A stretch of DNA of 64,000 bases, from positions 62,001 to 126,000 of the IMG/VR virus record IMGVR_UViG_3300042545_001134. One strand, written 5' to 3'. The translations under genes and the position numbers were made by a program. The notes beneath the pieces are model-generated. The model was not told where the DNA came from. It saw only the letters and a program-made list of their open reading frames with translations, and made no database searches. Positions 1 to 6,080 of this stretch are shown here, piece after piece (the stretch's first letter is position 1; every line of letters starts with the position of its first letter).

Positions 1-1327
1 GACCTTTTAATAGTCTACCTTTCTTACTCTTACCTTTTACTTCGTTACCTTCAGCGTAAGTTATATTATATGCCCCAACAATATCGGCATCCTTTAGTTT
101 ACCGTAATCGTCACACTCAATGTTAATACAGGTGAATTTGGTTTTATCCTTATCCTTTCTATTCTCCTTATCCACATTCTTACAAGTTGGACATGTAATA
201 GATGTATCTTTTGGATTCACCCACAGGATTTGAATCCCCACCATCTTTGCTTTATATTCAATATCCGTTTGAAGTTGATAATATGCCCACGATTTTAAAA
301 ACAAATCTTTAGTGTTTGTGGTTATACCAGTTAAGTCCTCCATCTTAATAATACCCACATTGTATTGTTGGGCAATATCAATAACATCCCTACTGATATC
401 GTGATTCATTAACACGGACCAATTGTGTTCCTTTTCCTTTAATCTTTCCATTCCCAACATCTTTCTTGTTCTTCCATGTCCACCCTTGGCAAACTTCATG
501 GATTGTTGAAGTGCTCTTCGTATCTTATAGAACTTCATTCTCTCAGTTTGAATCTTTTCACCGATTGAAATCTGTGATGGTTGATGTTTCTCCCCGTCAA
601 TGTATATTGATACTGGTCTGTTTATACCCAAATCAATTCCCATTACCTTATCAGGAATCATATCCTTTGATTTTGTATCAGGTACTGTACATGTTAATAA
701 TAAAATAAAATCTTCATCCTTAATTTGAATAGAACTGGTGTTCATTTTGTATTCACCATTCAATATTCTATTGACAATTTTTTCATTACCACTTCTATCC
801 CTTCCGTAATGTAATTTGAATTTAATTCCTTTGTGAATACTTCTCTCTGATGACGATAATGGTAAGTTAAAAACATAATCCTCCCCTTCTTTACTCACCA
901 CAGGTTCTTTATTTACCGTACCTTTAAATGGTATTGTTAATGATGTTTTTCTAAATGATGGTATTGACATCTTTCCTTGTAAAATATCATAAAAACTCTC
1001 ATCAATAGTTTTATATATCTTTTGACAAAACGACGATTTTATGTTCGATGATATGATGGTATTTTTCTTCATTAAGTTATAACCCATATTCTCCACCATC
1101 GCCCCGTATTTTTCCTTGAAAATCTCTTTTGATTTAACTTTAGTAATATTAGTTGAATTTTTTATCTCATCCAACTCGTACTGGTTACAAACAGTTAACC
1201 TAATAACTTCGTTTCCAATTTGAACCAAGTCAGATGCAATTCTTTTTACGTAATTGTACGATGCAGTTCTGTCCTTGCTGGTTTCACCAACCGCAATCAA
1301 TTTGATTTTTCTTGTGATTATTGACAT
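1..1327 (-). CDS. cas12f: Miniature type V CRISPR effector, Cas12f-like (TnpB-derived RuvC nuclease); 3' end lies outside the window
   Basis: Manual translation from ATG at 1327 is open to base 1 (>442 aa, MSIITRKIKLIAVG...). Motifs: GKMSIPSF, VMGIDLG (D232), KGGHGR, KMEDL (E330), WAYYQLQTDIEYKA, TSITCPTC / CINIEC zinc finger, DADIVGAYNI (D415). CRISPR array begins 25 nt upstream. Confidence 0.85.
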   Translation of the reverse strand, partial: MSIITRKIKLIAVGETSKDRTASYNYVKRIASDLVQIGNEVIRLTVCNQYELDEIKNSTNITKVKSKEIFKEKYGAMVENMGYNLMKKNTIISSNIKSSFCQKIYKTIDESFYDILQGKMSIPSFRKTSLTIPFKGTVNKEPVVSKEGEDYVFNLPLSSSERSIHKGIKFKLHYGRDRSGNEKIVNRILNGEYKMNTSSIQIKDEDFILLLTCTVPDTKSKDMIPDKVMGIDLGINRPVSIYIDGEKHQPSQISIGEKIQTERMKFYKIRRALQQSMKFAKGGHGRTRKMLGMERLKEKEHNWSVLMNHDISRDVIDIAQQYNVGIIKMEDLTGITTNTKDLFLKSWAYYQLQTDIEYKAKMVGIQILWVNPKDTSITCPTCKNVDKENRKDKDKTKFTCINIECDDYGKLKDADIVGAYNITYAEGNEVKGKSKKGRLLKG

Positions 1328-1351
1328 ATCATGTTCTATTTTATGTTCATC

Positions 1352-1692
1352 GTTATATTAAAAACTTCAAGTAAGAGGTATTTACAACATAAATCCCATT
1401 AGTTCGTATGGGTTCGTAGTTGTATACACCTTTCAAATAAGAGGTATTTACAACGTACTTGATGACCTGCAACAGGTCCATCAGTTGTATACACCTTTCA
1501 AATAAGAGAAACCCAAAGTACATGTTGTATACACCTTTCAAATAAGAGGTATTTACAACGTTTTCTCTTTCCCATGAGGTGCATCACCTGTTGTATACAC
1601 CTTTCAAATAAGAGGCATTTACAACTATTAACGGATGTACCAAAAATTAACATATAGTTGTATACACCTTTCAAATAAGAGGCATTTACAAC
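1352..1692 (-). CRISPR. CRISPR array, 6 repeats / 5 spacers; minus-strand repeat GTTGTAAATACCTCTTATTTGAAAGGTGTATACAAC (36 nt)
   Basis: Full repeats at 1419-1454, 1524-1559, 1590-1625, 1657-1692; truncated repeat 1484-1508; degenerate terminal repeat 1352-1388. Spacers 30, 29, 15 (deleted), 30, 31 nt. Degenerate repeat at the cas end and promoter at 1900-1930 give minus-strand orientation. Confidence 0.97.
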
Positions 1693-1894
1693 ATGGTTAA
1701 CCCCATCTTATTATGAATCAACATATTGTGAATGATTCCCTTATTAAAAAATAAAAGGTATTTAGTGAGTGAGAAGTTAATCTCCAGAAAAATTCCATCC
1801 TGTTTATTCAGGATTCACTATGGGCTGTACAACCAGCCCCACCAAAGTTTTACCTCTGATGAAAATATATTGAAGTTTCCAATATTTCAAAGAA
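1693..1894 (-). ncRNA. Structured CRISPR leader / candidate tracrRNA-like RNA
   Basis: Non-coding stretch between promoter and first repeat with hairpins (GGGCTG-GTTGTA-CAGCCC 1822-1839; ATCCTG-AATAAA-CAGGAT 1797-1814) and short segments complementary to the repeat. Confidence 0.45.
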
Positions 1895-1899
1895 CAATA

Positions 1900-1930
1900 C
1901 AAAGATACGTGTATTTTTTAGATATCCAAA
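1900..1930 (-). promoter_or_regulatory. Bacteroidota housekeeping-sigma promoter for leader, array and cas12f
   Basis: Minus strand TTTG-N19-TATCTTTG matches the -33/-7 consensus TTTG / TAnnTTTG. Confidence 0.75.
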
Positions 1931-1951
1931 TTTTTTTTTAAAAATATTTTT

Positions 1952-2044
1952 TTATTCATCATCCTCCAACGAATCACTGTATGTGGGTTTATCCTTTGGG
2001 ACATAGTCCTCATCACAATTATCAATATGGTCCTCGTCGTTCAT
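1952..2044 (-). CDS. Possible 30-aa acidic peptide (MNDEDHIDNCDEDYVPKDKPTYSDSLEDDE)
   Basis: Manually read ORF with A-rich upstream region; too short for the ORF track. Confidence 0.3.
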   Translation of the reverse strand: MNDEDHIDNCDEDYVPKDKPTYSDSLEDDE

Positions 2045-2060
2045 AATAGATTTATTTTAA

Positions 2061-2238
2061 ATAACACCCTGATTTATCCAACTTACAGGTGTCGTGGCTG
2101 TCCCCGTTACCGGGTTAGAAATAGACTTTTGGATAGATAGTCAATCTAAATAGAGCCTTTCCCTATCAGAAGTTCCATATGGTTATCACACCACTTCTCA
2201 TCGTATTGGACATACTATCCGGTGATTAACCGAATCGC
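2061..2238 (-). ncRNA. Unidentified structured RNA, copy 1, directly 3' of tRNA-like element
   Basis: Non-coding, duplicated at 3803-3983; differences between copies keep hairpins and a GNRA loop. Confidence 0.6.
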
Positions 2239-2239
2239 G

Positions 2240-2360
2240 TAGTCAGGACAGGAATCGAACCTATAACCAGTTTTCTAAGCCCTACGTGCAGGATTTTCAC
2301 TGCCTCGTACTGGTGTCTAATCGAGCATACACAGCGTTTAACCAATTCCGCCACCTGACT
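2240..2360 (-). ncRNA. tRNA-like element (121 nt) with expanded, non-canonical centre, copy 1
   Basis: Acceptor AGTCAGG/CCTGACT + discriminator A; Leu/Ser-like D arm TGGCGGAATTGGTTAAACGC; T arm ATAGG-TTCGATT-CCTGT; ~70-nt centre with no 7-nt anticodon loop; no encoded CCA. Confidence 0.7.
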
Positions 2361-2548
2361 ATTAGCGTTCTATTAAAAATGGAAGTTATTGCGCCTATAC
2401 CATTTCGTTGATACCACCAATATGGCGTTCATTTTATTCCATTGTTCAAGTTTTGTGAACATTTTCAAATATAGATTTTTATTCCATCATTGCGCCTATT
2501 TTTCTTGCTTTGCGCCTATTTTTTCCACCATAAGGCTAAAATTAGAAA

Positions 2549-2788
2549 TTATTTTCCAAATGTTTCGTTGTAGTATTGTTGAGAGCCAATTACATATTCA
2601 TCTGAAATGCCAAATTTGTAAGCATTCATTATCTCCTGCTTGTGCATTTCTTTGGCTTCGTCAACATCCACTAAAAAATTATCTATCATTGTTGTTCTAA
2701 CAATTCCATCTGGTTCAGATTCTATTATTAAAATTCTTCGTTTCAATTCAGATATTAACCATTCTATACTGCTTTTTTGTTTTTCCAT
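2549..2788 (-). CDS. Small hypothetical protein, paralogue of 2925-3143
   Basis: Both share A(K)EM-KQ-I-N-Y...YYNETFGK; the last 27 nt of the two genes are identical. Confidence 0.7.
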   Translation of the reverse strand: MEKQKSSIEWLISELKRRILIIESEPDGIVRTTMIDNFLVDVDEAKEMHKQEIMNAYKFGISDEYVIGSQQYYNETFGK

Positions 2789-2924
2789 TTTATTTGTTGT
2801 TTAAATGTTTTCTATTTCTTTTTTAATTCTTCATAAATACCACCTAAAATAATCATTATGATTAGTTGTATAAATGTAGTTACCCAATAATAAGCGTGTT
2901 CCATAAGTTTTTTTGTTATTTAAG

Positions 2925-3143
2925 TTATTTTCCAAATGTTTCGTTGTAGTATTTTTCTGCTGTTTCGTATGGCTTATCTCTAAAATGCCACGATTGATTA
3001 TAGCAATTGATGATTTGTTGCTTCTCCATTTCTTTGGCTTGTAAAAGAATATCTTTATACATTTTCCTTAATTCTTCTGAATCAAAAGATACTAATCCTA
3101 ATAATTTTAATTCAATAAATCTTACTGCTGTTTGTTTTTTCAT
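2925..3143 (-). CDS. Small hypothetical protein, paralogue of 2549-2788
   Basis: MKKQTAVRF...QAKEMEKQQIINCY...YYNETFGK. Confidence 0.7.
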   Translation of the reverse strand: MKKQTAVRFIELKLLGLVSFDSEELRKMYKDILLQAKEMEKQQIINCYNQSWHFRDKPYETAEKYYNETFGK

Positions 3144-3532
3144 TTTGTTTGTTGTTTAAGTTTTACAATCTCAATCAGTTTTTTAATACACTCAAGCTCT
3201 GCTTCTTTATAAGTACCATTAAATTTTAAAGGTTCAGTTCCACATAGTCTATTCCATTTATCATTAATAATTAGATAAGAAAACTCTTGAGTACCAACTT
3301 CAATTAATCCTGTTAATCTATATTCTTCTCTAAACCATCTAAATACTTGTTGGTAAATTGGGGCTTTAATAAGATTCTTTTCTAATAAATTAGAATCAAA
3401 CATTTGTATTAGTATTTCACCAGTTGGCTCTTCCCATTCGGTAACAATACAATATCTACCAAAACAAGGTTCATCAAATCCTAATTCTTTTAAAGCTAAT
3501 GCTTCTTGGTATGGCATAAATTCTTTTTCCAT
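3140..3532 (-). CDS. Hypothetical phage protein (ALALKELGFDEPC type)
   Basis: 130-aa ORF overlapping the next start; A-rich initiation region. Confidence 0.7.
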   Translation of the reverse strand: MEKEFMPYQEALALKELGFDEPCFGRYCIVTEWEEPTGEILIQMFDSNLLEKNLIKAPIYQQVFRWFREEYRLTGLIEVGTQEFSYLIINDKWNRLCGTEPLKFNGTYKEAELECIKKLIEIVKLKQQTK

Positions 3533-3721
3533 TTTGTTTGTTGTTTAAGTTATATAATTTGTTAAATGTTTTTTTGGTGCTTGTTAAATGTTTGTATAAA
3601 TTTTTAGTAACGTTTCATGCACTTTGTCCAGTTAATTCATTAAAAGACTGGACATTACACGCCTTTAAATGCTTAAGCCTATTGGCTTTTGTTAATTGTA
3701 CCTATGGTACTTTGTTAATTG

Positions 3722-3800
3722 TAGTCAGGGCCGGACTCGAACCGGATAAACAACCATTTTATTGGACTTGGGCACCATCCCGCATTACGCCCACCTGACT
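3722..3800 (-). ncRNA. Third tRNA-like element (79 nt), same acceptor stem, different centre
   Basis: AGTCAGG...CCGG-TTCGAGT-CCGG-C-CCTGACT-A; D-like stem GGGC/GCCC; no canonical anticodon arm. Confidence 0.6.
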
Positions 3801-3802
3801 AT

Positions 3803-3983
3803 ATAACACCCTATTTTATCCAACTACAGGTGTTAAGGCTGTCCCTATTGCTAGGTTAGGAATAAACTTATTTAAATTAGATAGTCAATCTAAATAGAAC
3901 CTTGTCCTATTAGCAGTTCCATATGAGGAATCACCTCACTTCTCATCGTATTGGACATACTATCCGGTGATTAACCGAATCGC
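3803..3983 (-). ncRNA. Unidentified structured RNA, copy 2
   Basis: Homologous to 2061-2238; flanked on both sides by tRNA-like elements. Confidence 0.6.
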
Positions 3984-3984
3984 G

Positions 3985-4105
3985 TAGTCAGGACAGGAAT
4001 CGAACCTATAACCAGTTTTCTAAGCCCTACGTGCAGGATTTTCACTGCCTCGTACTGGTGTCTAATCGAGCATACACAGCGTTTAACCAATTCCGCCACC
4101 TGACT
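3985..4105 (-). ncRNA. tRNA-like element (121 nt), copy 2, identical to 2240-2360
   Basis: Exact duplicate. Confidence 0.7.
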
Positions 4106-4526
4106 ATTTTTTCTTATTCTTCTTTAATTCTACCACCTTCTCATACTCCTCAGATTCAATTAAATTATCAATAACCATCTTTTCAAATATGTTTTTGTCA
4201 CTTTCATTATCCGATAATTCGTGATGTGCACCACTTTTGAAAAGTTGGTACATACTTTCAAGTGACTTAGAATCGTTCTTCATTTGATAATTTAATGAAT
4301 AGAGCATTAAAGAGTTTAATAAACCAAACCAAGTATGTTCAGATTCGGTAAATTCGGATTCGTCTTTACCTTTGGATAATATTTTATTCCCAACTTCAAA
4401 GATATCATCAATATCAATTGGAGATTTTAATCTGACATCACTGTTTTCAATCAAATCAATCATAATCTGAGGTATGTGTGTATATTTTTTCATGGCACAA
4501 AGATAATCAATATATTCTAAAAACAA
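4104..4526 (-). CDS. Hypothetical protein (true start probably MKKY at 4493)
   Basis: ORF track; promoter-like TATCTTTG lies just upstream of 4493. Confidence 0.65.
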   Translation of the reverse strand: MFLEYIDYLCAMKKYTHIPQIMIDLIENSDVRLKSPIDIDDIFEVGNKILSKGKDESEFTESEHTWFGLLNSLMLYSLNYQMKNDSKSLESMYQLFKSGAHHELSDNESDKNIFEKMVIDNLIESEEYEKVVELKKNKKK

Positions 4527-4553
4527 AAAAATATTTTTTTGTTCATCAAAATG

Positions 4554-5183
4554 TTACTCGTCGTTTATTTTTAATTCAAATTTTTTAATTTTAAAAAATT
4601 TTTCAAAATATTCCCGTTTAAAGAGCCATCCACGAGTTTTTTTAAGGTTACCACCGGAAACGACGGACCAAATATGTTCTTTGGCAAGGTTTATTATCCT
4701 TATTGGAGTATTAATCCAAATTTCACCAATAAAAACGTATATAGTGATAAAATAATCTGAGGTCGTAGCAATAACTCCAGAATCTTGTTGTATACCATTT
4801 TCATCTTCGCATGAAATTTCTATAAACCCATTACCTGTATCTTTATCGGCAGATAATTGCCTCTCAAAATGTTGCATTTTTAATACCCTTTCATATTTAC
4901 CGGGGTATGCCTTCAAGTCTAATTTTACTTCAAATTTTCTTATTTTCCCATACTTACTGGCAACAATGTCAAATTTCTTTAATTCACCAGTCGGTAAGTT
5001 AGTTCTAAAACATGATATAATAGTCCAACCATAATCAATTAATAGTTGAATAATAATTTTTTCACCAATATCACCAACTCTACTATCTTTACTAAAAGAA
5101 TAATCATTGGGGTATTGTTGCCTTAACCTACCCATTTTATGGATAAAATTATAATCATCTTCGGTTAAGTAAACTTTTTTCAT
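4554..5183 (-). CDS. PD-(D/E)XK nuclease-like protein
   Basis: GDIGEK...FDIVA...KFEVK motif spacing. Confidence 0.55.
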   Translation of the reverse strand: MKKVYLTEDDYNFIHKMGRLRQQYPNDYSFSKDSRVGDIGEKIIIQLLIDYGWTIISCFRTNLPTGELKKFDIVASKYGKIRKFEVKLDLKAYPGKYERVLKMQHFERQLSADKDTGNGFIEISCEDENGIQQDSGVIATTSDYFITIYVFIGEIWINTPIRIINLAKEHIWSVVSGGNLKKTRGWLFKREYFEKFFKIKKFELKINDE

Positions 5184-5187
5184 GGCA

Positions 5188-5219
5188 CAAATATAATAGG
5201 TTATTTAGAATATTCCAAA
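5188..5219 (-). promoter_or_regulatory. Bacteroidota-type promoter with extended TTTGGAATATTC element
   Basis: TTTG-N20-TATATTTG. Confidence 0.75.
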
Positions 5220-5316
5220 TTATTCTTCAATGTTTTTTGATTTGAACCATAGGAGTATAACCCCCACGATTCCGTAGACAATTAAAAATGTCAATATGTG
5301 TTCAACGATTATCATA

Positions 5317-5586
5317 TTATTTTCCATCAAGATGAATGTCGGTTGCGTAATTCTTTTCCTTATTGAATAAAGGTTCTTGGTCTACCAACTCGTCATGTAG
5401 TGTCCAGTCATCATATGTTTTTTCACCATCGTTGAAACTCATATTATCTGAATTCTCTTTTAGGTATTCCAGCACCTGTTCTTCTTCCATACCCTGAAGT
5501 TCAGGATAGTTATCCGTGTCAATCTCAATTGATTTCTTTAGAATCCATGTGTGAAACCCTTCGCTTAATTGAATTTTTAGTTTCAT
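5317..5586 (-). CDS. Hypothetical protein
   Basis: 89-aa ORF in co-directional gene run. Confidence 0.65.
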   Translation of the reverse strand: MKLKIQLSEGFHTWILKKSIEIDTDNYPELQGMEEEQVLEYLKENSDNMSFNDGEKTYDDWTLHDELVDQEPLFNKEKNYATDIHLDGK

Positions 5587-5589
5587 AGT

Positions 5590-5853
5590 TTAAAAATTGT
5601 CCGTTGAATTCATTTTAATGTTCTCATCATATTTGGTTTTACCATAATGTTGAGCGTTAATTGTTTCACCGGTTGTTGTGAAGTAATGATGTTTACCCCC
5701 ATCAAAGAATCGGTACATCTTTATACCATCCTTCTCGAATAGAAACTCAACTTGGAATCCATTACCCTCTGTTGTTGATGATTGTGGGTCCTTGTAACAT
5801 CCTGTTAATAGAACACCCGCCAATAATAATCCTAATATTTTTTTCATTACCAA
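5590..5853 (-). CDS. Small lipoprotein (DUF4884-like)
   Basis: Lipobox LLTGC; VEFLFEKDGIKMYRFFDGG. Confidence 0.6.
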   Translation of the reverse strand: MVMKKILGLLLAGVLLTGCYKDPQSSTTEGNGFQVEFLFEKDGIKMYRFFDGGKHHYFTTTGETINAQHYGKTKYDENIKMNSTDNF

Positions 5854-6080
5854 TTATCTAAGTCTGTTAAATCTAATTCTGTTTTTGTGTTATGACTGTA
5901 CACAACAATTTCACTACCAATACCCGTAGGGGTTACTTTCCATGTGAGTAGTCCGCACTCACCATAGATTGCCTTGATATGTGATTTCCACTCATTAAAT
6001 TTATTTTGTTGCTCGTCGCTTAACTCAACAGTTATAGTGTTGTTTTTATTTTTCATAATACTTCGGTTAATACTCTCCAC
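5847..6080 (-). CDS. Hypothetical protein
   Basis: ORF track, tight packing. Confidence 0.6.
   Translation of the reverse strand: MESINRSIMKNKNNTITVELSDEQQNKFNEWKSHIKAIYGECGLLTWKVTPTGIGSEIVVYSHNTKTELDLTDLDNW

What the first reader, a model, noticed from the sequence alone, without database searches (positions are those of the whole stretch)
1693..1894. Array leader looks like a cis-encoded tracr/omega-RNA with pseudoknot potential
Seen on the minus strand: hairpin GGGCTG-[GTTGTA]-CAGCCC (1822-1839), whose whole loop is complementary to the repeat 3' end TACAAC next to the spacer; AGAGGTA (1851-1857) complementary to repeat TACCTCT; a 15/16 repeat-like segment (1749-1764); further hairpins at 1797-1814 and ~1865-1886. 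Known: TnpB omega-RNAs and Cas12f guides form a pseudoknot with the bases just 5' of the guide. Inference: the scaffold sits directly upstream of repeat 1 and forms a natural single guide.
Basis: partly seen in the sequence, partly recalled or inferred. Interest (0 to 1): 0.7.

Follow-up and report, generated by a model that had tools for sequence, protein, structure and literature searches.

The report
Phage Cas12f tracrRNA gene before array
The stretch upstream of this giant-phage CRISPR array encodes the structured helper RNA (tracrRNA) that a miniature Cas12f nuclease needs; this is a known kind of RNA, here in an unusual place and apparently transcribed together with the array.

Summary
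On the minus strand, window ~1893..1745 encodes a roughly 150-nt structured RNA. It lies between a promoter-like site and a 36-nt-repeat CRISPR array (1692..1353), which is followed by a 475-aa cas12f gene (1327..off window). The record is a 310-kb phage.

- **Conservation:** 27 copies of this scaffold from 20 related phage loci share five helices with strong compensatory change. In those helices 94.8% of cells are paired, against 74% in shuffles.
- **Pseudoknot:** the 6-nt loop of hairpin 1839..1822 co-varies with the last 6 nt of the cognate repeat (GTTGTA/TACAAC, GTTGTG/CACAAC, GTTGTT/AACAAC).
- **Known relative:** the published guide RNA of the closest solved relative, Al3Cas12f, has the same design (loop GUUGGA, crRNA end UCCAAC).
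- **Expression:** contigs from five metatranscriptome runs cover the scaffold and run into repeat 1. None covers cas12f.
- **The 15/16 repeat-like segment** is the 3' anti-repeat.
- **AGAGGTA** is at chance level and belongs to a co-varying stem.

Verdict: an ordinary Cas12f tracrRNA, and a new member of a known kind. The "natural single guide" reading is only partly right. In this copy the scaffold is fused to a degenerate half-repeat and a conserved 32-nt pseudo-spacer, not to repeat 1. True fusions occur in relatives and in a second, ORF-overlapping copy just left of the window.

The parts
1900..1930 (-). Candidate Bacteroidota-type promoter: TTTG (1930..1927), a 19-nt spacer, then TATCTTTG (1907..1900).
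   Evidence: Read from the sequence. The same TTTG-N19-TACATTTG arrangement occurs in L002. This is inferred and not tested. The consensus is recalled from knowledge of Bacteroides/Flavobacterium promoters.
1886..1895 (-). Conserved box GTTCTTTGAA. It is either the 5' end of the RNA or a -7-like promoter element.
   Evidence: The box is present upstream of nearly every free-standing scaffold in loci with 38-95% protein identity. It is absent from the ORF-embedded copies. The long Al3Cas12f sgRNA starts UUGAAAU.
1745..1893 (-). tracrRNA scaffold as a whole, about 150 nt. Neither the 5' end nor the 3' end is exactly defined.
   Evidence: The covariance model R1 hits window 1751-1871 at 122 bits, E 9e-26. 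RNA contigs cover 1710-1875 (X15, 100% identity), 1666-1872/1875 (X18, X19) and 1663-1818 (X20). Fold z-score is -3.6.
1867..1885 (-). 5' hairpin AUAUUGGA-AAC-UUCAAUAU.
   Evidence: Predicted in the minimum-free-energy fold. It is kept in close relatives only. The RNA contigs start at 1871-1875, inside this hairpin.
1840..1861 (-). Stem 1 (CAUCAGAG / CUUUGGUG).
   Evidence: RNAalifold helix 1. All 4 scored pairs show compensatory changes. The sequence itself is not conserved.
1822..1839 (-). Pseudoknot hairpin GGGCUG-GUUGUA-CAGCCC. The loop (1833..1828) pairs with the repeat's 3' end UACAAC (repeat:anti-repeat 1).
   Evidence: The stem is 98.8% paired, with compensatory change at 5 of 6 pairs. 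Loop and repeat 3' end pair 6/6 in 17 of 19 modules and show three pair types at position 6. Only 3 of 100,000 permutations reach the observed score. Al3Cas12f has the same design.
1764..1819 (-). Junction stem AGUGA (1819..1815) / UCACU (1768..1764), which encloses hairpins 3 and 4.
   Evidence: RNAalifold helix 3 is 98.5% paired, and its outer pair switches between A-U and G-C in 10 sequences. CACUCAC is invariant, and ACACUCA is present in the Al3Cas12f tracrRNA.
1797..1814 (-). Hairpin 3: AUCCUG-AAUAAA-CAGGAU.
   Evidence: Five of 6 pairs show compensatory change and 95.7% of cells are paired.
1771..1784 (-). Hairpin 4: GAGA-UUAACU-UCUC.
   Evidence: Predicted in the minimum-free-energy fold. 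Both pairs scored in the alignment co-vary. Its length varies among relatives.
1749..1764 (-). AUACCUUU (1761..1754) pairs with the repeat's AAAGGUGU (repeat:anti-repeat 2).
   Evidence: The complementarity can be read directly from the sequence. AAATACC is near-invariant. The segment is positionally equivalent to the Al3Cas12f anti-repeat AAUUCACUUGA, which pairs with UCAAGUGAAU. No shuffle of 2000 gave a 15/16 match.
1746..1756 (-). U-run UUUUAUUUUUU, a possible leaky 3' end of a free tracrRNA.
   Evidence: Read from the sequence. It is present in the upstream-type modules only. RNA contigs continue past it.
1693..1745 (-). Degenerate half-repeat ending in CACAAU (1730..1725), followed by the 32-nt pseudo-spacer 'spacer 0' (1724..1693).
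   Evidence: This stretch is conserved in OWN, L163, L002 and L165, while the true spacers of those loci differ. No target was found in the phage genome.
1353..1692 (-). CRISPR array: repeats at 1692..1657, 1625..1590, 1559..1524, a truncated unit at 1519..1484, 1454..1419, and a degenerate terminal repeat at 1388..1353.
1..1327 (-). cas12f gene (475 aa). The last 33 codons lie left of the window.
   Evidence: NCBIfam guided_TnpB E 4e-43 and Cas12f2 E 8e-26. Best PDB matches are Al3Cas12f 9NZO/9NZR at E 9e-49. The full ORF was recovered. The RuvC D/E/D residues and the zinc-finger cysteines are invariant.

Best explanation
Window ~1893..1745 (minus strand) is the tracrRNA gene of a type V-F (Cas12f) CRISPR system carried by a roughly 310-kb phage.

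The RNA folds into stem 1, a GC-rich hairpin, a junction stem enclosing two hairpins, and a single-stranded 3' anti-repeat. It joins each crRNA through two contacts:
- The hairpin loop GUUGUA pairs with the last six repeat bases UACAAC, immediately 5' of the guide. This is the pseudoknot, or repeat:anti-repeat 1.
- AUACCUUU pairs with the repeat's AAAGGUGU. This is repeat:anti-repeat 2.

The resulting dual guide is presumed to load a Cas12f dimer for DNA cleavage.

The scaffold has its own promoter-like site, points the same way as the array and cas12f, and appears to be read through into the array. The scaffold and pre-crRNA would then start life as one transcript.

Shown here: sequence and structure conservation, pseudoknot covariation, homology of design to validated Cas12f guides, and presence of the scaffold in RNA libraries.

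Inferred: exact RNA ends, processing, action in trans on spacers 1-5, dimer loading and cleavage.
For: - **The effector is a Cas12f.**
- **The scaffold is conserved and structured.** There are 27 homologous copies in 20 loci. RNAalifold finds 23 pairs, 17 of them with compensatory changes. 94.8% of cells are paired, against 74.4% in shuffles (0/500) and 33-47% when partners are slid; the covariation score is 0.604 against 0.208.
- **The pseudoknot co-varies.** Loop and repeat 3' end form 112 of 114 possible Watson-Crick pairs, with A:U, G:C and U:A at position 6. The permutation test gives about p = 3e-5. The G:C state arose separately in two major clades.
- **Validated relatives have the same architecture.** Published Al3Cas12f, MG119-3 and MG119-2 sgRNAs have a stem 1, a hairpin whose loop is complementary to the crRNA 3' end, an ACACUCA motif and a 3' anti-repeat. 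The guide-pseudoknot-stem core is reported as conserved in all Cas12 guides and in the TnpB omega-RNA.
- **The scaffold is abundant as RNA.** In each of five metatranscriptome runs (X15, X16, X18, X19, X20) a contig of 156-263 nt covers the scaffold, while cas12f has zero depth. Two DNA runs cover the region evenly.
- **Copy number.** The covariance model finds only two copies in the 310-kb genome.
Against: - There is no biochemical test.
- The RNA evidence comes from assembled, unstranded contigs of environmental metatranscriptomes. All but X15 come from related strains (about 95-98% identity). Contig ends are assembly ends, not mapped RNA ends.
- The transcription start is ambiguous. Two candidate promoter readings give a start between about 1893 and 1878, whereas the contigs begin at 1875.
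- In this clade each repeat carries its own copies of the anti-repeat and of GUUGUA. The repeat could therefore fold on itself and compete with, or partly replace, the tracrRNA contacts.
- A second intact scaffold copy at the cas12f 3' end could be the functional one.
Confidence: 0.85

Rival explanations
1. The scaffold, degenerate half-repeat and 'spacer 0' form a functional natural single-guide RNA with a dedicated, conserved guide. It might, for example, regulate expression in the way Cas9's long tracrRNA does, in addition to or instead of serving the array in trans.
For: The scaffold is followed in cis by a half-repeat whose CACAAU still pairs 5/6 with the loop, and by a 32-nt segment conserved among relatives at 74-95% protein identity whose true spacers all differ. 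The X15 RNA contig ends 15 nt into this segment. Relatives and the second copy carry true scaffold-half-repeat-spacer fusions.
Against: No target for spacer 0 was found in the phage genome. The best seed match is 11 nt, with only 16/32 identity overall. The cis half-repeat has lost a clear repeat:anti-repeat 2 partner, and its local hairpins differ between 95%-identical strains. Other upstream-type lineages (L004, L005, L167) carry a different conserved segment in this position. The contig end is not a mapped 3' end.
Confidence: 0.15
2. The functional tracrRNA is the second copy, which overlaps the cas12f 3' end in the position of an omega-RNA. The window's upstream copy would then be a decaying duplicate that serves only as leader and promoter.
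For: The second copy scores 110 bits with intact, compensated helices (GGGUUG/CAACCC) and ends in GGTGTATACAAC plus a spacer. The downstream position is the rule for Cas12 arrays and omega-RNAs.
Against: The upstream copy scores higher (122 bits), adjoins the only intact array, and is the region seen in RNA libraries. The second copy region shows only 26-36-nt repeat-like pieces in the RNA runs. The array next to the second copy is degenerate, and that copy lacks the conserved upstream box. L004, L005 and L007 have only the upstream copy.
Confidence: 0.07
3. The region is a plain CRISPR leader (AT-rich, with promoter and integration signals) that happens to contain repeat remnants. It encodes no scaffold RNA.
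For: It is by position the leader. A 7-nt complement such as AGAGGTA arises by chance in half of shuffles. Degenerate repeat fragments are common in leaders.
Against: Five helices show compensatory change in loci down to 38% protein identity. The loop co-varies with the repeat end. The same element lies downstream of cas12f in other loci and overlaps the ORF in this genome. The design matches validated tracrRNAs. The region is selectively present in RNA libraries.
Confidence: 0.02

Closest known systems
tracrRNA/sgRNA of Al3Cas12f and the Cas12f-MG119 family (Alistipes and related; PDB 9NZO/9NZR; PMC13186708)
   Same: The protein is the best solved match, at E 9e-49. The guide has the same order of elements: an optional 5' hairpin starting UUGAAAU, stem 1, a GC hairpin with a 6-nt loop complementary to the last 6 nt of the crRNA repeat (GUUGGA/UCCAAC there, GUUGUA/UACAAC here), internal hairpins, an ACACUCA motif and a 3' anti-repeat. 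The size is similar, at 129-156 nt.
   Different: The helix sequences differ, and the homology was judged by motif order rather than by a scored alignment. This system sits in a 310-kb phage, the scaffold lies upstream of both array and gene, and it is followed by a fossil half-repeat and pseudo-spacer. A second copy overlaps the ORF. The natural locus layout of the MG119 systems is not described in the text I read.
Un1Cas12f1 (Cas14a1) tracrRNA:crRNA
   Same: It has the pseudoknot (repeat:anti-repeat 1) and stem 5 (repeat:anti-repeat 2) architecture, as summarised in PMC10097598. From memory only, its tracrRNA has a GGGCUG...CAGCC hairpin whose loop pairs with the AUGCAA of the repeat, and its repeat starts GTTGCA and ends TGCAAC.
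   Different: The protein is a distant match (E about 1e-16) from an archaeal source, and the scaffold is longer. I could not verify the Un1 sequence in the paper library.
ISDra2 TnpB omega-RNA (PMC10097598)
   Same: It has the guide-pseudoknot-stem core and acts as a 'natural sgRNA', with the tracr-like and crRNA-like parts joined by a loop. This genome's second scaffold copy overlaps the 3' end of the nuclease ORF, as an omega-RNA does.
   Different: The window's copy is upstream, followed by a multi-spacer array, and not at a transposon end. No TnpA or transposon ends were looked for. The protein scores as Cas12f-like rather than as IS200/IS605 TnpB.
Chimeric single guide RNAs of sigma-E-associated dCas12f (PMC13472631; PMC10691335)
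   Same: The tracrRNA and a half direct repeat are fused into one RNA in a Cas12f-derived lineage of Bacteroidota. The protein match to 9N9C is E 1e-18.
   Different: Those proteins are nuclease-dead, have lost their arrays and act in transcription. Here the RuvC residues are intact and a true array is present.
TranC systems and the 'functional RNA splitting' model (Jin et al. 2025, as cited in 10.64898/2026.03.27.714800)
   Same: The idea that a transposon right-end or omega RNA split into tracrRNA plus crRNA. The scaffold-half-repeat-array modules here look like that transition.
   Different: I did not read the primary paper. Membership in any TranC clade was not tested.
Cas9 tracr-L natural single guide (Workman et al. 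2021, cited in PMC13472631)
   Same: A tracrRNA form that carries its own guide.
   Different: It belongs to a type II system and targets the cas promoter. No such target was found here.

Membership tests
Cas12f (type V-F) tracrRNA | Encoded next to a cas12f gene and its CRISPR array. | tested here: met
   The order on the minus strand is scaffold 1893..1745, array 1692..1353, cas12f 1327...
Cas12f (type V-F) tracrRNA | An anti-repeat that pairs with the 3' half of the repeat (repeat:anti-repeat 2 / stem 5). | tested here: met
   AUACCUUU (1761..1754) is complementary to the repeat's AAAGGUGU, giving 8 pairs including one G-U. Matching changes are seen by eye in L006, L089 and L166. These changes were not scored formally.
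Cas12f (type V-F) tracrRNA | A pseudoknot (repeat:anti-repeat 1) between an internal tracrRNA segment and the repeat bases next to the guide. | tested here: met
   Pairing is 6/6 in 17 of 19 modules, with three pair types at position 6. Only 3 of 100,000 permutations reach the observed score. The changes are independent on the protein tree.
Cas12f (type V-F) tracrRNA | A conserved multi-stem scaffold supported by covariation. | tested here: met
   (94.8% paired; 17 of 23 pairs with compensatory change). The covariance model finds both genomic copies.
Cas12f (type V-F) tracrRNA | Expressed as a stable RNA. | tested here: inconclusive
   Metatranscriptome contigs cover the scaffold in 5 of 6 RNA runs while cas12f has zero depth. 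The contigs are unstranded and assembled, so no RNA ends were mapped.
Cas12f (type V-F) tracrRNA | Required, together with crRNA, for DNA cleavage by a Cas12f dimer. | not testable with these tools
   This needs interference or cleavage assays.
TnpB omega-RNA | Overlaps or follows the 3' end of the nuclease ORF and ends in a single guide at a transposon end, with no CRISPR array. | tested here: not met
   The window's copy is upstream of the gene and precedes a 5-spacer array. Only the second copy (L001 1488..1372) overlaps the ORF 3' end, and it too is followed by degenerate repeats. Transposon ends were not searched.
Natural single-guide RNA (scaffold covalently joined to a repeat 3' half and a guide) | The scaffold is directly continuous with an intact repeat 3' half and a functional guide. 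| tested here: inconclusive
   In the window the cis half-repeat is degenerate (CACAAU, 5/6 pairing) and the following 32 nt are conserved without a detectable target. Intact fusions with variable first spacers occur in L008, L085, L086, L088, L089, L090, L169, L170 and in the second copy.
CRISPR leader | The sequence upstream of the first repeat carries the array promoter, and spacer turnover happens at that end. | tested here: inconclusive
   The position fits. The only promoter-like motifs lie upstream of the scaffold. RNA contigs bridge scaffold to repeat 1, and one of them continues to repeat 2. A 98%-identical strain carries a different first spacer. The terminal repeat next to cas12f is degenerate. 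There is no direct promoter or adaptation test, and no Cas1 or Cas2 in the genome.

The most novel reading that the evidence does not exclude
In this phage-restricted Cas12f lineage the scaffold and array form one mobile transcription unit, a 'scaffold-half-repeat-spacer-array' module. Such a module can sit before the gene, after it, or on both sides. Its first unit would be a natural single guide and the remaining units would be served in trans.

In the window's clade the repeats have in addition absorbed copies of the anti-repeat and of the pseudoknot loop. Each crRNA could then form the guide-pseudoknot-stem core by itself.

That would make these loci living intermediates between the omega-RNA, the dual tracrRNA:crRNA guide and the tracr-independent palindromic-repeat guide. 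The conserved 'spacer 0' might be a dedicated guide.
Probability: 0.2. Interest if true: 0.7.

Novelty: new member of a known kind. Interest (0 to 1): 0.45.

Why it matters
This result assigns a function to the array "leader" and gives the full RNA parts list for a compact (475-aa), apparently active Cas12f from a giant phage. That parts list is what is needed to reconstitute the system or to design a single guide for it.

The family offers natural variation that bears on how the transposon omega-RNA split into tracrRNA and crRNA:
- The scaffold occurs upstream of the gene, downstream of it, on both sides, or overlapping the ORF.
- It is fused to half-repeats that are intact in some loci and fossil in others.
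- The repeats carry an internal anti-repeat in some lineages and not in others.

The result also shows that, in this clade, the main array and its tracrRNA lie upstream of cas12. That layout is described as rare for Cas12 systems (PMC10691335).

Tried and rejected
- **Rfam scan** of window 1-6000 at E<=1. No tracrRNA-like family was found, only two chance-level hits.
- **AGAGGTA as an anti-repeat.** Rejected: it is at chance level and not conserved, being part of co-varying stem 1.
- **Spacer targets.** All 86 spacers extracted from the 21 loci were searched with blastn-short against the 310-kb genome and against all fetched loci. Only 13-17-nt chance matches turned up, so neither PAM nor target is known.
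- **'Spacer 0' self-target.** The only extended seed match is 11 nt at G000:205303, with 16/32 identity overall, so it was rejected.
- **Host or cellular relatives.** The GTDB species-genome scan gave only TnpB-level matches at 27-36% identity. The IMG/VR and metagenome scans gave few close loci, because the degenerate patterns were swamped by TnpB. More loci came from exact-protein look-ups, one of which returned no DNA.
- **Cas1 and Cas2** in the phage genome: none found.
- **Exact transcription start.** Two promoter readings disagree by about 10-15 nt, and the contig ends (1871-1875) fit neither exactly. This is unresolved. The sigma-70 scanner was not used because the motifs look Bacteroidota-type.
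- **Un1Cas12f1 tracrRNA sequence.** I could not verify it in the library, so that comparison is marked as memory.
- **The 'Cas12 hacker' (Cas12p) paper.** It describes a different, larger family. It was used only for its statement that Cas12 tracrRNAs generally form a pseudoknot with the repeat 3' end.
Full report
**Setting**

The window is G000:C1:62001-126000 of an IMG/VR virus record of 310,691 bp, estimated 93% complete, so it comes from a giant phage. Read on the minus strand, the left end of the window has this order:
- small ORFs;
- a non-coding stretch, 1930..1693;
- a CRISPR array with a 36-nt repeat (repeats at 1692..1657, 1625..1590, 1559..1524, a truncated unit at 1519..1484, 1454..1419, and a degenerate terminal repeat at 1388..1353);
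- 26 nt later, an ORF from 1327 that runs off the window.

The full ORF is 475 aa. It matches NCBIfam guided_TnpB (4e-43) and Cas12f2 (8e-26), and Pfam Cas12f1-like_TNB. Its best solved relatives are Al3Cas12f (9NZO/9NZR, E 9e-49), then OsCas12f, AsCas12f, CnCas12f and, more distantly, Un1Cas12f1. The RuvC D/E/D residues and the zinc-finger cysteines are invariant in 33 relatives. It therefore looks like an active miniature type V-F effector. No Cas1 or Cas2 is found in the phage genome.

**Checking the observation**

- The hairpin GGGCTG-GTTGTA-CAGCCC lies at 1839..1822, and its loop is the exact complement of the repeat's last six bases. This never arises in 2000 dinucleotide shuffles.
- The 15/16 repeat-like 16-mer at 1764..1749 also never arises in 2000 shuffles.
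- A 7-nt complement such as AGAGGTA arises in half of the shuffles.
- The region 1905..1740 folds with a z-score of -3.6.

**Relatives**

The protein has hundreds of relatives, many on contigs of 180-340 kb. None of the 185,579 GTDB species genomes holds a close one. I collected 20 loci at 38-95% protein identity.

A blastn search with the leader showed that it is conserved. Unexpectedly, it also showed a second copy in this same genome. That copy overlaps the last ~90 nt of cas12f and ends ~27 nt past the stop, at L001 1488..1372, just left of the window. A covariance model built from the family finds exactly these two copies in the 310 kb: 122 bits at window 1751-1871 and 110 bits at G000:C1:61874-61988.

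**Structure**

A MAFFT alignment of 27 scaffold copies gives, by RNAalifold and with no input from me, five helices:
- stem 1;
- a junction stem AGUGA/UCACU;
- a fourth small hairpin.

Of the 23 pairs, 17 show compensatory changes. On this structure 94.8% of cells are paired. The figure is 74.4% when partners are shuffled (0 of 500 shuffles reach the observed value) and 33-47% when partners are slid. The covariation score is 0.604 against 0.208.

AGAGGTA is simply the 5' strand and loop of stem 1. That stem changes sequence freely while keeping its pairing (for example CATCGGGAG/CTCGATG and CATCTTCTT/AAGAAGATG), so AGAGGTA is not an anti-repeat.

**Pseudoknot**

For 19 scaffold-array modules I tabulated the hairpin loop against the consensus of the adjacent repeats. 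The loop pairs 6/6 with the repeat's last six bases in 17 modules and 5/6 in the other two. The sixth position takes three Watson-Crick forms:
- GTTGTA with TACAAC in most modules;
- GTTGTG with CACAAC in L006 (both modules) and L089;
- GTTGTT with AACAAC in L090 and L170.

Re-dealing the repeats among modules reaches the observed 112/114 pairs in 3 of 100,000 trials. On the protein tree the G:C form arose in two different major clades, and one four-member clade holds all three forms. The repeat's own 5' hexamer pairs less consistently with the 3' end, at 4-6/6. The trans contact with the scaffold loop is therefore well supported.

**What the repeat-like segment is**

The scaffold ends ...CACUCACUAAAUACCUUUU. 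AUACCUUU (1761..1754) is complementary to AAAGGUGU, which lies in the repeat just before A+UACAAC. This is the classical second repeat:anti-repeat duplex.

The segment looks like the repeat, rather than like its complement, for a specific reason. In this clade the 5' half of the repeat (GUUGUA-AA-AUACCUCU) is itself a copy of the pseudoknot loop and of the anti-repeat. Most relatives have repeats without that internal copy, of the form ...CACAATTTGAAAGGTATATACAAC.

**Comparison with validated guides**

The supplementary table of the Al3Cas12f paper gives experimentally used guides. Al3Cas12f has these elements, in this order:
- an optional 5' hairpin beginning UUGAAAU;
- a short stem (CCCCUUCGGGG);
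- the hairpin GGGCGC-GUUGGA-GCGCCU;
- internal hairpins;
- ACACUCA;
- the anti-repeat AAUUCACUUGA, joined by a GAAA tetraloop to the crRNA UCAAGUGAAUAUCCAAC.

Its loop GUUGGA is the complement of UCCAAC. MG119-3 has the same loop and the same crRNA end, and MG119-2 has UUUUAU against AUAAAA. The window's scaffold has the same elements in the same order.

The TnpB structure paper states that the guide-pseudoknot-stem core is conserved in all Cas12 guides. It also states that the omega-RNA is a natural single guide whose pseudoknot and stem correspond to repeat:anti-repeat 1 and 2 of Cas12f.

**Expression**

Fourteen lake and freshwater DNA runs hold the region. Six metatranscriptome runs hold part of it.

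Laid on 4.3 kb around the locus, the RNA runs gave:
- X15: a single 166-nt contig, 100% identical, at window 1710-1875, and nothing else in the 4.3 kb;
- X18 and X19: 210- and 213-nt contigs at 1666-1872/1875 (about 95% identity, a relative);
- X20: a 156-nt contig at 1663-1818;
- X16: a 263-nt contig running from 1847 through 'spacer 0' and repeat 1, then through a different 29-nt spacer into the next repeat (98% identity).

The cas12f ORF has no RNA contig over any length in any of the six RNA runs; the only match is a 32-nt fragment in X19. Two DNA runs cover the region evenly.

The 3' limits at 1663-1666 are what an assembler with 31-nt words gives on entering a 36-nt repeat. The transcripts therefore enter the array. 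I conclude that the scaffold is an abundant RNA and that transcription continues from it into the array. These are unstranded assembled contigs, so strand and true ends are not shown.

**Start and end**

Two promoter readings are possible:
- TTTG (1930..1927)-N19-TATCTTTG (1907..1900) fits the Bacteroidota consensus as I recall it and recurs in L002. It would start the RNA near 1893.
- The box GTTCTTTGAA (1895..1886), present before nearly all free-standing scaffolds, may itself be a promoter element, or it may be the RNA's 5' end.

RNA contigs begin at 1871-1875.

After the anti-repeat comes the U-run UUUUAUUUUUU (1756..1746), then a degenerate half-repeat ending in CACAAU (1730..1725), then 32 nt (1724..1693), then repeat 1. 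The 32 nt are conserved in OWN, L163, L002 and L165, although all true spacers of these loci differ. No target was found in the genome.

**Family architecture**

In the more distant loci (L008, L085, L086, L088, L089, L090, L169, L170) the unit lies downstream of cas12f. There the scaffold runs without a break into a hairpin (AAAUACCUUU-loop-AAAGGUAUAU), then ACAAC, then a variable first spacer, then ordinary repeats. This is a genuine natural single guide followed by an array.

Other layouts also occur:
- L006/L168 carry complete modules on both sides of the gene.
- L088 has two modules in tandem.
- L004, L005 and L007 have only the upstream module.
- This genome, along with L002, L083, L084 and L163, has the upstream module plus an ORF-overlapping copy. 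In this genome that copy is fused to GGTGTATACAAC, a 29-nt spacer and two degenerate repeats.

The ORF-overlapping copies lack the upstream box. They may therefore be cut from the mRNA, as omega-RNAs are. This last point is inference.

**Conclusion**

The finding is a Cas12f tracrRNA gene. The AGAGGTA contact is not. The 'natural single guide' holds for relatives and for the second copy. For this copy it holds only with respect to a fossil or special-purpose 'spacer 0'.

The kind of RNA is known and has been characterised in the closest solved relative. This is therefore a new member of that kind, from a phage-restricted lineage. Its layout is instructive for three reasons: the array and tracrRNA lie upstream of cas12, which is reported to be rare; scaffold and array are co-transcribed; and the repeats carry their own anti-repeat.

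Noticed in passing
L001:1230-1492 (= G000:C1:61731-61993, just left of window position 1): A second scaffold copy overlaps the last ~90 nt of cas12f and encodes the protein's C-terminal tail (...DGVGCTTH...). It is fused to GGTGTATACAAC, then a 29-nt spacer, a degenerate repeat, a 32-nt spacer and another degenerate repeat. Its position is like that of an omega-RNA. Its helices are compensated relative to the upstream copy.
   Followed up: yes
window 1484-1523 (minus strand): One array unit is truncated. Only 14 nt of a spacer (ATGTACTTTGGGTT) are joined to a repeat that lacks its first ~10 nt. This points to an internal deletion in the array.
   Followed up: partly
window 1657-1692 and 1590-1625 versus 1524-1559 and 1419-1454: The two scaffold-proximal repeats read AAATGCC where the older ones read AAATACC. 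In addition, a 98%-identical strain seen in run X16 carries a different first spacer. Together these suggest that spacer turnover happens at the scaffold end, even though the phage has no Cas1 or Cas2.
   Followed up: partly
window 2239-2360 and 3984-4105 (minus strand), inside the 179-nt direct repeat 2185-2363 / 3930-4108: There are two 99%-identical tRNA-like genes of about 122 nt, each with a good acceptor stem and T-arm. ARAGORN calls them only when introns are allowed, predicting a 32-nt insert in the anticodon loop and a long variable arm; its 'Gly-GCC' label is unreliable. In the sequencing runs, contigs from other organisms match the two ends of these genes with only 29-38 nt between them, where the window has 74-86 nt.
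   Followed up: partly
window 2546-3560: Short direct repeats spaced about 355-390 nt apart (families D4, D8, D9, D10) mark a run of tandem paralogous small ORFs (72-130 aa) upstream of the CRISPR locus.
   Followed up: no
window 2467-2524 (minus strand): A weak partial Rfam tmRNA match (11 bits, E 0.26, far below the gathering score). It is probably chance, and ARAGORN finds no tmRNA nearby.
   Followed up: partly
L006:3500-5970 and L168:2530-4990; L088:800-1660: Some relatives carry two complete promoter-scaffold-array modules. In L006/L168 they flank cas12f; in L088 they lie in tandem. The two modules have different repeat 5' halves and differently compensated internal hairpins. The scaffold plus array therefore behaves as a duplicable unit.
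   Followed up: partly
window 1900-1930; L002:1917-1955: The promoter-like motif TTTG-N19-TAnnTTTG is of the Bacteroidota type. The closest characterised Cas12f relatives are also from Bacteroidota (Alistipes; sigma-E dCas12f lineages). This hints at a Bacteroidota host for the lake phage. The host was not otherwise tested.
   Followed up: no
L163, L165, L167 (about 1-2.5 kb downstream of cas12f): A bPH_2 (PF03703) gene recurs on the opposite strand near cas12f in three relatives, and a DNA methylase gene recurs in L166 and L167. I did not check whether the window's genome shares them.
   Followed up: no
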